From: Vitrella brassicaformis CCMP3155
Lineage: Eukaryota > Protista > Chromerida
DNA length: 64,000 nt
Reading direction: 5' to 3'
NCBI GenBank assembly: GCA_001179505.1
Contig: CDMY01000802.1
Coordinates: 1 to 64,000, forward strand
Part shown: positions 14,655 to 39,304 of the stretch, piece after piece
Layout of the letters: the number at the start of each line of letters is the position of its first letter
How positions within the stretch are numbered: position 1 is the first letter of the stretch
The notes under the pieces: model-generated
Database searches by the model: none
What the model was told of the DNA's origin: nothing
The model's input: the letters and a program-made list of their open reading frames with translations, nothing else
Program-made: the position numbers and the translations under genes

Positions 14655-16082
14655 TCACTGCTGCCCACTCAGATGCAACACTTCTATCTCGTCAGCCATG
14701 AAATCACTCGACCCAGCCAGATGAGCAGTGCCATATTCATTCCTCCTTCCCATGTAATCCTCAGGCACATGGTCGGTATGAGTGCACTGACAGCAGCTGC
14801 GGATGTCGGCAGCTGGCTGTTCATCCTCACCAGGACCGCTACAGCGGCCATCATACAAATACAGATGTCCCCCAATATACACTTTCGCATCGATGAGCAT
14901 ACACCCCTCCTCCCTCCCCGCCACCCGCACATTCTGCCAATCACGGCGAATCTCAATCTTTGTCGGCTTCTTGAAGTGGCCGGCCAGCGAGAACTGCCAT
15001 ACATCACACGGGTAGTAGTGCCAATCGGTGGGGTCATCGGGCTCCCAGATGCCGTCACTGATGAAGGCGCCGAACACATACATGTCCTTGCGTATGATAA
15101 ACACCAGGCCGGTCTTGTCGCCCACACAGCGGAGCAGATTGGCATATGTGGTGCCGTCTCGCGAGGACCTGACAGACACACAGACAGATGGATACATACA
15201 TATATATCACATCAGACTGCTGTATTACATGTGTGGGTGGCCTTGCCGACCTACCGATAGACAGAACGTAGCCGCTCGTCGCCTTCTATCAGGCCCAGCA
15301 GGCCGTAGTACTCCCACACGCCCAGAGAGCTGCCCACGGGCGGAGCCACCTGCACGACAGCACCAAGCACACCGCCTGCACAAATGAATCGCTGCTTGCG
15401 TGCGTGTCAGTGTGAGTGCGCACCAGTGGCTTGTGTAGCGAGGGAAACAACGATGCCCCCACACGCAGATCGCCAACACGCCCCTCCACACTACAGGCAA
15501 GCAATCCAGCAAACAATTCATAGAACAGATGGCTGCCTCTGCCGCTCTCTCTTGCTTTTTTACTTGGTGATTCTTGCCGAGTCTTGGTGCTTCCGAAGAG
15601 GCCTGAGCAGCCTGATCATGGCGTAATTCTTGAGGACGCTGGCAGCCGGGCTGACCACCCTGCACACACATTCACACAGACACATAGAGAGAGGCAGAAT
15701 GTGGACAGCGGGACATCTGCCTTGTCTTGCTGACCTGCACGTGGGGCACTCGGTGCTTCCATCGGCCTGCTTGATGACACTCACACACTGCAGGTGTTCA
15801 CACACACACAAACAAACAGACGGACAAACCATGAGTGCATTGTGCGGGATGGTTGTCTTGTGCTGCGCACTCACATCACTGCAGAGTGAATGGCCTGCAT
15901 GCATCGTATCAACACACACATCACAAACGAGGGGAAATGCATCGGATCCATCATCCTCCATGCACCTGCGAACCATATGTGTCGGTCGGCTCACCGCATC
16001 TGCCGAGTGTCATGGGCACGTGGCAGCCCTCAGCCTCCCACTTACAATAGCACACGTCACACACCATCTCCACTGACTCCAT
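14655..16082 (-). CDS. RING-HC (C3HC4) finger + TLDc domain gene (TLDc-1, no signal peptide); the fusion needs a 1-nt frameshift near 15603
   Basis: Spliced RING: MESVEMVCDVCYCKWEAEGCHVPMTLGRCG|HSLCSD|CVSVIKQADGSTECPTCR|VVSPAASVLKNYAMIRLL. TLDc exons: VAPPVGSSLG...LRSVYR|SSRDGTTY...LVFIIRKDMYVFGAFIS...WQFSLAGHF...FMADEIEVL. Confidence 0.7.
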
Positions 16083-32437: not shown

Positions 32438-33493
32438 ATGCTTGTTCGGGCAGTGGCTGGCCTGCTGATCGTCCTTTGTGTGGTGGAGGGACAACAGGTG
32501 CACGCAGACGCCATCACCCATCCACTCATCAAGTGTGTCCATGTCTGACTCATGCGTCCAGGTCCATTTGCGTGGCCTGCAGGAGGTTACCCCGCCGAAC
32601 GGCACGTCACTGTCAGCGTCAGAGTATGAGGGGCTGCTCGGCCTACTGGGGGGCAACGACACCACAGAACTCACCTCACTCTACCGGTAGACACACATCA
32701 TGCCAACAGCTGGGATGATGGGCAGATTCTGTGTCTGTGTGTGTGTAGGACGTCTGTTCACGGCACCACCTATGGCGACCTGCTGGACAGAGTGGGCGAC
32801 GCGAAGCCTATCGTGCTGGTCATCAGGAAGGACAAGTATGTTTTCGGCGTCTTCATCAGCAAGGGTCTGCTGCTGCCCGACGACCGAACGGGAAGCAACT
32901 TCTACGACTGTCAGAATACATACCCGTGTGATCTGTGGCATTTCTCGCTGGCCGGGCACTTTCCCAAGCCGACCAAGATCGAGATCCGCCCAGTAATCAA
33001 GCGTGTGGAGGTGGCGGGGAGGGAGGGGAATGTGAGTGGTGCGAATTTCATAATCGGGACGTATCAGCTTTTGGCCTGTGGTGTGGTGGCTGAGTCTGGG
33101 CTGGGTCCGAGGAATAAGCGGACTGCTGCCGACATTCGCAGCTGCGCTCAGAGAATCCCCATGAGCCTTCTACCTGAGGGCTACACCGGGGAGAAGAATA
33201 GCAGCTGGGGCTATGCTCTGTTCGGCGGCGGGTCAGGCTATTTCACGGCCGATGAGATAGAAGTGCTGCAAGTGCGAGAGTCAATTGACCAACCTTCACC
33301 CCCTATGACAACAGCACCCGAACCAGTTGACAGCACACCGACAATAACACCCCAGCCGACAACAACCGGGCCGATTAGCGCACCCCTCACGACAACATCC
33401 GATCCAGCTGAGAGCGCAGCGGTGTGTCAGGGGGGCTTGCGGTGGGGCGGGATGGTAGTAGCGATGCTTATCTGCACGGGGGGGCTCTTGTAG
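32438..33493 (+). CDS. Signal peptide + TLDc + Thr/Pro-rich stalk + predicted GPI-anchor signal (TLDc-3)
   Basis: MLVRAVAGLLIVLCVVEGQQ|VHLRGLQEVTPPNGTS...|TSVHG...FTADEIEVLQ, then PSPPMTTAPEPVDSTPTITPQPTTT..., then ESAAVCQGGLRWGGMVVAMLICTGGLL*. Confidence 0.88.
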
Positions 33494-38365: not shown

Positions 38366-39304
38366 TCACTGCACCAGATGCAGCACCTCTATCTCGTCAG
38401 CCATGAACTCACTTGACCCACCCAACAGGTTGTCGGGTATCGCCCGCCGCTGCTGCTCCTCCCGCTGGCGGCCGATGCACCTTATAGTCTCCATATTCTG
38501 GTCATGTATCCTGAACAGATTCTCCATCTGCTGCGTGTCGCGATCGGCCACCGTTTGCTGCCGTGTGTCCATGCAGCTCGTACGAACACTGCTGCTGAAG
38601 GTGTACTGCCGGCAGCTGCGGATGTCGTCAGCAGGCCGGCGGCTGCCACGGCTGTCAGCCGCCAGATGCAGATACCCACCGATCCGCACATTTGCACCCA
38701 ACGCACTTCCCTCCTTCCCCGCCACATGGACAATCTGCCCCTCTCGTGGTATCTCGATCTTGGTCGGCTTCTCGAAGTGGCCGGCCAATGAGTAATACCA
38801 CACATCACACGGGTACATGCTGCTGCCGGTCGGGCTGTCGGGCAGCAGAATGCCGCAATTGATGAAGGCGCCAAACAAGTACTGACCATTTCTGACCACC
38901 AACACGAGAGGCTTCGCGTCGCCCACTCGATCCAGCAGGTCGTCATAAGTGGTGCCGTGCACAGACGTCCTACACACACACACGGAATCTGCCCATCATC
39001 CCAGCACTGTTGGCATGATGTGCGTCTACCGGTAGAGTGAGGTGACTCGTGTAGTGCCATTGGCCCCCAGCAGGCCGAGCAGCCCCTCATACTCTGACGC
39101 CGACAGCGACGTACCGTCAGGCAATCCCTGCAGGCCACGCAAATGGACCTGAACACACGAGTCATTCGAGCCACACCACACCAAAGCATCAAATGGATGA
39201 GTAGATGGGTCATGGCGCGAGGACGTTCTCACCTGCCCGACGACCCGACCGGCCGCCGTGAGTACGACAGTGATCATCAACAGCACGATACAAGAAGTTG
39301 CCAT
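38366..39304 (-). CDS. Signal-peptide TLDc protein (TLDc-5) with a 38-aa in-frame insertion
   Basis: MATSCIVLLMITVVLTAAGRVVGQ|VHLRGLQ...ANGTTRVTSLYR|TSVHG...FMADEIEVLHLVQ*. Confidence 0.88.

What the first reader, a model, noticed from the sequence alone, without database searches (positions are those of the whole stretch)
32438..33493. TLDc on a mucin-like stalk with a GPI-type tail
Other copies stop 2-5 residues after EIEVL. TLDc-3 continues in frame into a ~45-aa Thr/Pro-rich segment, then small residues (E-S-A-A), a spacer and a terminal hydrophobic stretch (MVVAMLICTGGLL). That is the standard layout of a GPI-anchored surface protein, which would display TLDc on the cell surface (inference).
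Basis: partly seen in the sequence, partly recalled or inferred. Interest (0 to 1): 0.78.

Follow-up and report, generated by a model that had tools for sequence, protein, structure and literature searches.

The report
Signal-peptide TLDc protein with GPI-type tail
One gene of the coral-associated alga Vitrella brassicaformis joins a secretion signal, a TLDc domain (a fold known only from proteins that bind the proton pump inside cells), a threonine/proline-rich stalk and a C-terminal signal of the lipid-anchor (GPI) type, so it is probably tethered to the outside of the cell; nobody has tested this.

Summary
The window is Vitrella brassicaformis CCMP3155, scaffold C802. The gene has three exons (32438-33493, + strand) and equals the public protein CEM33989.1 / A0A0G4GT89 (309 aa).

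Its parts, in order:
- a signal peptide;
- a TLDc domain (Pfam 32.4 bits against a cut-off of 24.5; the top 16 Foldseek PDB hits are all TLDc structures);
- a 47-aa stalk that is 57% Thr+Pro+Ser;
- a C-terminus with the GPI layout: omega site Ser284 (E-S-A-A), a 7-aa spacer, then 16 uncharged hydrophobic residues that end the protein.

The genome encodes Gaa1, PIG-T, PIG-U, PIG-A and one C13 peptidase. The other eight copies in the window lack any such tail.

The tail core motif occurs at only five loci in the genome. This is the only one with signal peptide, domain, linker and tail all in frame. The other four are frameshifted, deleted or chimeric.

GPI anchoring is the best reading (about 0.6). 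A C-terminal membrane helix (about 0.2) and an unused extension (about 0.1) are not excluded. No GPI predictor or transcript data could be used.

The scan had already noted a secreted, probably lipid-anchored TLDc family on other pieces of this genome (s1-252817, s1-212069).

The parts
32438..32497 (+). Exon 1: signal peptide (20 codons; Arg4, a 12-residue hydrophobic core, then V-E-G before Q-Q)
   Evidence: Translation by reference equals the start of P0001. The best 11-residue Kyte-Doolittle window scores 3.33, at residues 6-16. 28 of 58 family proteins have a comparable N-terminus.
32498..32561 (+). Intron 1 (64 nt, GTGCAC...TCCAG)
   Evidence: Gap between the exon translations that match P0001.
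32562..32686 (+). Exon 2: start of the TLDc domain, with the sequons NGTS and NDTT
   Evidence: Matches P0001 residues 21-62. The Pfam TLD match covers residues 40-103. Sequons listed.
32687..32748 (+). Intron 2 (62 nt, GTAGAC...(TG)nTAG), which splits the Arg62 codon
32749..33271 (+). Exon 3, TLDc part, up to EIEVLQ (residues 62-236)
   Evidence: Nine paralogous exon copies in the window. AlphaFold2 pLDDT is 84-97 in most 10-residue blocks of residues 31-240; it dips to 57-64 for residues 171-190. The best Foldseek hits are TLDc structures.
33272..33412 (+). Thr/Pro-rich stalk, residues 237-283 (47 aa, 57% T+P+S), not a tandem-repeat array
   Evidence: Composition. No tandem repeat found. No secondary structure is predicted for residues 240-309, and pLDDT is 52-66 over residues 241-280.
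33272..33355 (+). Candidate optional intron (84 nt, GTGCGA...CCCCAG). It is in frame, so the tail is kept whether or not it is spliced.
   Evidence: Scan of all AG acceptors: only 33355 keeps the frame. The annotated protein retains this stretch.
33413..33421 (+). Predicted omega site Ser284, with omega+1 and omega+2 both Ala
   Evidence: Rule-based scan.
33422..33442 (+). Spacer, residues 287-293 (V-C-Q-G-G-L-R)
33443..33490 (+). Terminal hydrophobic segment, residues 294-309 (16 aa, mean Kyte-Doolittle 1.82, no charged residue). It contains the conserved core W-G-G-x3-A-M-x-I-C.
33491..33493 (+). Stop codon TAG

Best explanation
The gene encodes a secretory pre-pro-protein.

Shown from sequence:
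- an N-terminal signal peptide;
- a TLDc-fold domain carrying four N-X-S/T sequons;
- an unstructured stalk rich in Thr and Pro;
- a 25-residue C-terminal segment with the canonical GPI-signal layout.

Inferred:
1. The protein enters the ER.
2. The transamidase encoded in this genome cuts after Ser284 and attaches a GPI lipid.
3. The stalk is O-glycosylated.
4. The TLDc domain is held on the outer face of the plasma membrane, or passed on into the cell wall, as with fungal GPI wall proteins.

The gene is the one intact membrane-tethered member of a Vitrella-restricted family of mostly secreted TLDc proteins. My reading of the function, which is inference only, is that the domain serves as a binding module outside the cell and not as a V-ATPase partner.
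For: - Gene model: exon-by-exon translations equal public protein P0001 = CEM33989.1 / A0A0G4GT89, tail included.
- TLDc: Pfam TLD 32.4 bits (cut-off 24.5) on P0001. The AlphaFold2 model has mean pLDDT 77. Foldseek ranks 1-16 are all TLDc structures (6r82, 8ar6, 7uzg, 7une, 4acj, 7fde, 9nn1), with probability 0.99-1.00.
- C-terminus: omega Ser284 followed by Ala-Ala, a 7-aa spacer, a 16-aa uncharged tail that ends the protein, and a 25-aa propeptide. The same rule flags only 3 of 58 family proteins. The C-terminus is absent from the four best 19-residue Kyte-Doolittle windows, all of which lie in the signal peptide (lowest 1.63). My own sum for the last 19 residues is about 1.5, under the usual 1.6 helix threshold.
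- Machinery in the genome: Gaa1 59 bits, Gpi16/PIG-T 64 bits, one Peptidase_C13 locus 97 bits, PIG-U 43 bits, PIGA 70 bits.
- The tail is not a one-off read-through. The same core motif sits right behind TLDc domains at four other loci. A diverged tail subtype keeps a small-residue cluster 10-11 residues before the W-G-G core although its linker is unrelated.
- The three mucin-type stalks cannot be aligned, yet all read as Thr/Pro-rich in the tail's frame.
- A second tail type with the same layout sits on an intact signal-peptide member, P0020.
- Woo et al. 2015 (PMC4501334) report mucin-like proteins and O-glycosylation enzymes in chromerids.
Against: - No GPI predictor could be run, and no transcript or proteome data were available. 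The tail search of 5.8 billion proteins returned only the protein itself, so no MMETSP transcript carries this tail.
- Four of the five tail loci are not intact anchored genes:
  - C770 changes frame inside the stalk.
  - C545 changes frame in a C10 run and has a stop inside its TLDc domain.
  - C234:56686 lost 40 nt of linker.
  - C234:123708 is a chimeric model without a signal peptide.
  This pattern could mean the anchor is dispensable.
- The invariant G-G-x3-A-M core is more conserved than GPI signals usually are. It resembles a small-xxx-small helix-packing motif, which favours a membrane helix.
- dN/dS on the 30 tail codons is about 0.6, so purifying selection on the tail is not shown.
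- Woo et al. saw no amplified GPI-linked families in chromerids.
Confidence: 0.6

Rival explanations
1. It is a type I membrane protein. The last 16-20 residues are not cleaved but form a short C-terminal membrane helix with no cytosolic tail, perhaps pairing with another helix through the conserved G-G-x3-A motif. The TLDc domain would still face the lumen or the outside.
For: The core W-G-G-x3-A-M-x-I-C is invariant at five loci and in two diverged tail subtypes, which is unusual for a cleaved GPI signal. Leu292 to Leu309 spans 18 residues with a mean Kyte-Doolittle score of 1.58.
Against: The C-terminus is not among the best 19-residue hydrophobic windows, and my own sum for the last 19 residues is about 1.5. 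There is no residue, and so no basic stop-transfer cluster, after the hydrophobic stretch. The only charge (Arg293) lies on the lumenal side. The small omega triplet at canonical spacing is kept in both tail subtypes although their linkers are unrelated.
Confidence: 0.2
2. The extension has no function. It could be a decaying relic, or a gene-model read-through that is not made in the cell. The product would then be an ordinary secreted TLDc like its neighbours, or the gene is not expressed.
For: Four of five tail loci are broken or chimeric. No transcript-derived protein carries the tail. Tail dN/dS is about 0.6. A rough composition estimate of my own puts the chance of a 73-codon open extension near 0.08.
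Against: Here the whole extension is in frame and ends exactly after the hydrophobic stretch. The linker just after EIEVLQ is conserved among the three mucin-type copies, and all three stalks stay Thr/Pro-rich in the tail's frame. Against the window copy the tail shows 4 synonymous and 8 non-synonymous differences, far fewer than TLDc-domain rates predict (p = 7e-4 and 1e-5).
Confidence: 0.12
3. The tail module was moved recently between unrelated TLDc genes by gene conversion or exon shuffling, so this copy gained its anchor secondarily.
For: Tail DNA is 86-87% identical between this gene and the C770 and C545 copies. Tail dS is about 0.21 against about 0.94-1.04 in the TLDc domains of the same gene pairs.
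Against: A tree that holds the three tail-bearing TLDc domains together is not rejected, and in fact scores 11 log-likelihood units better than the free quick search (AU p = 0.72). Plain vertical descent with a slowly changing tail is therefore just as possible. This concerns the origin of the tail and is compatible with any of the functional readings.
Confidence: 0.35

Closest known systems
Cytosolic TLDc proteins (OXR1/Oxr1p, NCOA7, TBC1D24/Skywalker, mEAK7/TLDC1, Rtc5p)
   Same: Same fold. They are the top 16 Foldseek hits, and the Pfam TLD model matches above its cut-off.
   Different: Those proteins lack signal peptides and act on the cytosolic V1 sector of the V-ATPase. This one has a signal peptide, N-glycan sequons, a Thr/Pro-rich stalk and a GPI-type tail, so it should never meet V1. 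Sequence identity is only 13-18%. The Pfam match covers only profile positions 11-76 of 170.
Fungal GPI cell-wall proteins and plant arabinogalactan / fasciclin-like proteins (from general knowledge)
   Same: The same layout: signal peptide, functional domain, Ser/Thr/Pro-rich glycosylated stalk, C-terminal GPI signal. All occur in walled cells.
   Different: There is no sequence relationship. The displayed domain here is TLDc, and the stalk is short (47 aa) and not repetitive.
GPI-anchored surface antigens of other alveolates (Toxoplasma SRS/SAG, Plasmodium MSPs, ciliate immobilisation antigens; from general knowledge)
   Same: Alveolate lineage, multigene families, anchoring by a signal peptide plus a GPI signal.
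   Different: The domains are unrelated. Here only a handful of at least 150 family copies carry a tail, and Woo et al. 2015 saw no amplified GPI-linked family in chromerids.
TLDc gene-family expansions in Entamoeba (54-343 copies; PMC12930195)
   Same: A lineage-specific amplification of TLDc genes in a protist, function unknown.
   Different: That paper discusses the family only in terms of oxidative resistance and V-ATPase binding and mentions no secretion or anchor for it. The Vitrella family was found only in Vitrella records or unnamed metagenome contigs.

Membership tests
TLDc domain (Pfam PF07534) | Match to the family profile above its curated cut-off | tested here: met
   32.4 bits against a cut-off of 24.5, E = 1.1e-7, on P0001. 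Only profile positions 11-76 of 170 are covered. Exon 3 alone scores 21.4 bits, below the cut-off.
TLDc domain (Pfam PF07534) | TLDc three-dimensional fold | tested here: met
   AlphaFold2 model with mean pLDDT 77. Foldseek PDB ranks 1-16 are all TLDc structures, E about 1e-5 for the best, target TM-score up to 0.64. A profile search of PDB sequences gave only a weak hit to mEAK7 (E = 0.76).
TLDc domain (Pfam PF07534) | Binding to the V-ATPase V1 sector in the cytosol | not testable with these tools
   The signal peptide predicts the opposite side of the membrane. This is inference.
GPI-anchored protein | N-terminal ER signal peptide | tested here: met
   By hydrophobicity and inspection only: Arg4, a 12-residue hydrophobic core (11-residue window 3.33), V-E-G before the likely cut. 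No SignalP-type predictor was available.
GPI-anchored protein | C-terminal signal: small omega, omega+1 and omega+2 residues, a 5-10 residue spacer, then 10-20 hydrophobic residues that end the protein | tested here: met
   Ser284-Ala-Ala, a 7-aa spacer, a 16-aa uncharged tail, a 25-aa propeptide. My rule flags 3 of 58 family proteins. This is rule-based; NetGPI, PredGPI and big-PI were not run.
GPI-anchored protein | The organism has the GPI synthesis and transamidase machinery | tested here: met
   Gaa1, Gpi16/PIG-T, PIG-U, PIGA and one C13 peptidase locus all score above their Pfam cut-offs in the genome. The C13 hit was not separated from legumain.
GPI-anchored protein | Lipid anchor shown biochemically (PI-PLC release, detergent partitioning, mass spectrometry) | not testable with these tools
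   Experiment needed.
Mucin-like (PTS) domain | High Pro/Thr/Ser content in a disordered stretch | tested here: met
   57% T+P+S over 47 aa. No secondary structure predicted, and pLDDT 52-66 over residues 241-280.
Mucin-like (PTS) domain | Tandem repeats | tested here: not met
   Tandem Repeats Finder finds no array in 33272-33412. It is a mucin-like stalk, not a mucin.
Mucin-like (PTS) domain | Dense O-glycosylation | not testable with these tools
   Woo et al. 2015 report the O-glycosylation pathway in chromerids.
Type I single-pass membrane protein | A hydrophobic helix of about 19 or more residues followed by a cytosolic, usually basic, segment | tested here: not met
   The C-terminus is not among the four best 19-residue windows (lowest 1.63), and my own sum for the last 19 residues is about 1.5. 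No residue follows the hydrophobic stretch.

The most novel reading that the evidence does not exclude
Vitrella uses the TLDc fold, known elsewhere only as a cytosolic V-ATPase partner, as a fast-diversifying binding module outside the cell. Most copies would be secreted and a few tethered by GPI on glycosylated stalks. Indels in the low-complexity linker (a C10 run, a 1-nt shift, a 40-nt deletion) would switch copies between tethered and released forms. This would be the extracellular arm of the alga's very large TLDc repertoire, which also includes BTB-, RING-, LRR- and HTH-TLDc fusions.
Probability: 0.15. Interest if true: 0.75.

Novelty: new variant of a known kind. Interest (0 to 1): 0.5.

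Why it matters
Every TLDc protein studied so far (OXR1, NCOA7, TBC1D24, mEAK7, Rtc5p) works in the cytosol on the V-ATPase. A TLDc domain with a signal peptide, glycan sequons, a mucin-like stalk and a GPI-type signal would put the fold on the other side of the membrane, so it must have some other partner.

This gene is the only intact tethered copy of its tail type in the assembly. That makes it the natural construct for testing where the Vitrella secretory TLDc family goes and what it binds.

It also bears on the surface repertoire of the free-living relatives of apicomplexan parasites, in which no GPI-linked family has been highlighted. I found no paper that mentions both TLDc and Vitrella. 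The genome paper does not mention the family.

Tried and rejected
- Tail-only search (residues 237-309) of the 5.8-billion-protein collection found only the protein itself, so there is no transcript-level support.
- A profile of 27 family members against PDB sequences gave only E = 0.76 to mEAK7. The fold search was needed to settle the domain.
- Intron after EIEVLQ. In the window only the 84-nt option keeps the frame. In the C770 and C545 copies, introns of 118 and 73 nt would rescue the tail frame. However, any AG at a codon boundary of a stalk rich in Pro-Glu-Pro or Pro-Gln-Pro would do the same, and the stretch right after EIEVLQ reads as a conserved linker plus Thr/Pro-rich sequence in the TLDc frame. 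I therefore favour real or assembly frameshifts there and leave the question open.
- Recent transfer of the tail between subfamilies. Low tail dS suggested it, but the AU test does not reject one clade of tail bearers (p = 0.72).
- Purifying selection on the tail. The ratio of about 0.6 rests on only 30 codons and is uninformative.
Exons were translated one by one by reference, and the full-length protein was taken by id (P0001) from the database. The joined step was left out.
- Nothing in the window looks human.

Full report
**Source and gene**

The window is scaffold C802 (bases 1-64000) of a 72,700,666-base assembly in 1064 pieces. Woo et al. 2015 (PMC4501334) give exactly these figures for Vitrella brassicaformis CCMP3155. 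All named protein matches are from that species. Nothing here looks human.

The feature is a three-exon gene on the + strand:
- exon 1, 32438-32497;
- intron 1, 64 nt;
- exon 2, 32562-32686;
- intron 2, 62 nt, splitting the Arg62 codon;
- exon 3, 32749-33493, with TAG at 33491.

I translated the exons one by one by reference and did not join them. The full-length sequence was taken by id from the database: P0001, 309 aa, equal to CEM33989.1 / UniRef A0A0G4GT89, named "TLDc domain-containing protein". Each exon translation lies in P0001 where expected. The public model therefore already includes the stalk and tail.

**The observation**

It holds. After EIEVL the frame runs on for 73 codons. These hold a 47-aa stretch with 11 Thr, 11 Pro and 5 Ser (57%), then Glu-Ser-Ala-Ala, then a short spacer, then a hydrophobic end with nothing after it. 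The two other frames have 3 and 4 stops across the same stretch.

The window holds eight more exon-3 copies, all on the minus strand. Seven end 2-6 residues after the motif and one (58892-58412) is frameshifted.

**The domain**

On the whole protein Pfam TLD scores 32.4 bits against a cut-off of 24.5, although only the first 40% of the profile matches. An AlphaFold2 model built on a 27-member family alignment has mean pLDDT 77. Most 10-residue blocks of residues 31-240 score 84-97, with a dip to 57-64 at residues 171-190. The stalk and tail have no predicted structure. Foldseek against the PDB returns TLDc structures at ranks 1-16: Skywalker/TBC1D24, NCOA7, mEAK7, OXR2, Oxr1, Rtc5p. The fold is therefore TLDc.

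**The family**

The genome gives at least 150 matches, from 385 first-look candidates.
- 28 of the 58 family proteins I collected have a signal-peptide-like N-terminus.
- Others carry RING domains and no signal peptide. One example is P0024, at 14658-16067 in this window.
- Named relatives are from Vitrella only. The rest come from short, unnamed metagenome contigs.
- Earlier notes of this scan describe the same secretory family, and BTB-, LRR-, HTH- and DRE-TIM-TLDc fusions, on other pieces of this genome.
- No paper in the library holds both "Vitrella" and "TLDc", and the genome paper never mentions the family.
- TLDc expansions of 54-343 copies are reported in Entamoeba. There they are discussed only in terms of oxidative resistance and V-ATPase binding.

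**Is the C-terminus a GPI signal?**

The best register puts omega at Ser284 with Ala-Ala at omega+1 and omega+2. A 7-residue spacer follows, then a 16-residue uncharged tail (mean Kyte-Doolittle 1.82) that ends the protein. The propeptide is 25 residues.

The C-terminus is not among the four best 19-residue hydrophobic windows, which all lie in the signal peptide (lowest 1.63). My own sum for the last 19 residues is about 1.5, below the usual 1.6 threshold for a membrane helix. No cytosolic residues follow the hydrophobic stretch.

A simple rule for this layout picks out 3 of 58 family proteins: this one, P0020 and P0058.

The genome encodes Gaa1, Gpi16/PIG-T, PIG-U, PIGA and a single C13 peptidase, each above its Pfam cut-off. 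Woo et al. report mucin-like proteins and O-glycosylation enzymes in chromerids. I could not run a trained GPI predictor.

**Is the tail a chance read-through?**

No. A protein search of the genome with the extension finds two more copies, and a DNA search finds the same two at 86-87% identity. Each lies right behind a TLDc domain on scaffolds C770 and C545. A degenerate pattern for the core W-G-G-x3-A-M-x-I-C finds five loci and none in the reversed control.

Two of the five, both on C234, form a diverged subtype with a short acidic linker in place of a stalk. Even so, they keep a small-residue cluster 10-11 residues before the core.

The three mucin-type stalks cannot be aligned with each other. 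All of them read as Thr/Pro-rich in the tail's frame, and the linker straight after EIEVLQ is conserved.

**The complication**

Only the window copy is intact.
- C770 changes frame by one base inside the stalk, and its annotated protein P0026 ends without the tail.
- C545 changes frame in a run of ten C and has a stop inside its TLDc domain.
- C234:56686 lacks 40 nt of linker compared with its sister and hits a stop before the tail.
- C234:123708 (P0058) is in frame, but it is a chimeric model with an AP2-like front, only a remnant of the first TLDc domain, and no signal peptide.

Introns of 118 nt (C770) and 73 nt (C545) could rescue the tail frame. I do not think this is significant. Any AG at a codon boundary of such a stalk would serve, and the supposed intron reads as coding in the TLDc frame. 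Assembly errors are also possible.

**Evolution of the tail**

Between the window copy and the C770 and C545 copies, the TLDc domains have dS of about 0.94-1.04 and dN of about 0.48-0.61. The 30 tail codons have dS of about 0.21 and dN of about 0.13. Against C770 the tail shows 4 synonymous and 8 non-synonymous differences, both far fewer than domain rates predict (p = 7e-4 and 1e-5). The ratio of about 0.6 says nothing about selection on the protein.

This fits either recent homogenisation or constraint at the DNA level. A family tree is poorly resolved. Forcing the three tail-bearing domains into one clade is not rejected and scores better than the free quick search (AU p = 0.72). Vertical descent therefore remains possible.

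From the donor at 33272, acceptors at 33314, 33326 and 33333 would shift the frame. The acceptor at 33355 removes 84 nt and keeps the tail. The annotation keeps the stretch. Its coding-like character in the paralogs argues against an intron.

**Other anchors in the family**

There are two further kinds of hydrophobic C-terminus.
- One sits on P0020 and P0025. Its pattern has three genomic hits, two of them on C802 directly behind TLDc copies; the reversed control gave one hit, so the C239 hit is doubtful.
- The other sits on P0012 and P0019, with two loci.

Tethered members are thus a small minority, roughly ten loci among at least 150 copies, but they recur.

**Verdict**

The architecture is real (about 0.9). 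GPI anchoring is the best single reading (about 0.6). A short membrane helix has about 0.2 and an unused extension about 0.1.

This is a known domain and a known anchoring layout in a combination that has not been described. The scan had already reached a similar reading on other DNA of this genome (s1-252817, s1-212069).

Noticed in passing
window 14658-16067 (minus strand): A RING-type zinc finger fused to a TLDc domain of the same family (P0024, 305 aa, no signal peptide). The same domain type is therefore used in cytosolic E3-like proteins as well as in secretory ones. Further RING-TLDc members are P0018, P0037, P0038, P0044 and P0053.
   Followed up: partly
window 58412-58892 (minus strand): A TLDc exon-3 copy with a frameshift after about 53 residues. 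The public models P0032 and P0033 around it look truncated or patched, so it is probably a pseudogene.
   Followed up: no
window 38375-38968 (minus strand): This copy has an in-frame insert of about 40 residues inside the domain that no other copy has. The insert is also present in the metagenome protein P0021. It may be an unspliced intron or a real insertion.
   Followed up: no
window 32728-32748 and the matching sites of the paralogs: The introns before exon 3 end in (TG)n followed by TAG, which reads as Cys-Val repeats in the open frame. TG/CA microsatellites are very common between the genes.
   Followed up: no
G000:C802:94015, C802:243431, C239:47411; C802:77001, C217:114981: Two other conserved hydrophobic C-terminal tail types lie directly behind TLDc copies outside the window. 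One sits on P0020 and P0025, the other on P0012 and P0019. P0020 also fits the GPI layout rule. The C239 hit is doubtful, because the reversed control pattern also gave one hit.
   Followed up: partly
L004 (G000:C234:120500-124300): The public model P0058 joins an AP2-like segment (26.5 bits, below the Pfam cut-off) to the remnant of one TLDc domain, a second TLDc domain and the conserved tail. It is probably a rearranged locus or a merged gene model.
   Followed up: partly
proteins P0013, P0016, P0017, P0019, P0021, P0027, P0029-P0031, P0033, P0035, P0036 and others: Short JGI and ENA metagenome contigs (1-5 kb) encode family members. P0033 matches the window exactly over its first 29 residues. 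This suggests Vitrella or a very close relative is present in environmental samples. The samples were not looked up.
   Followed up: no
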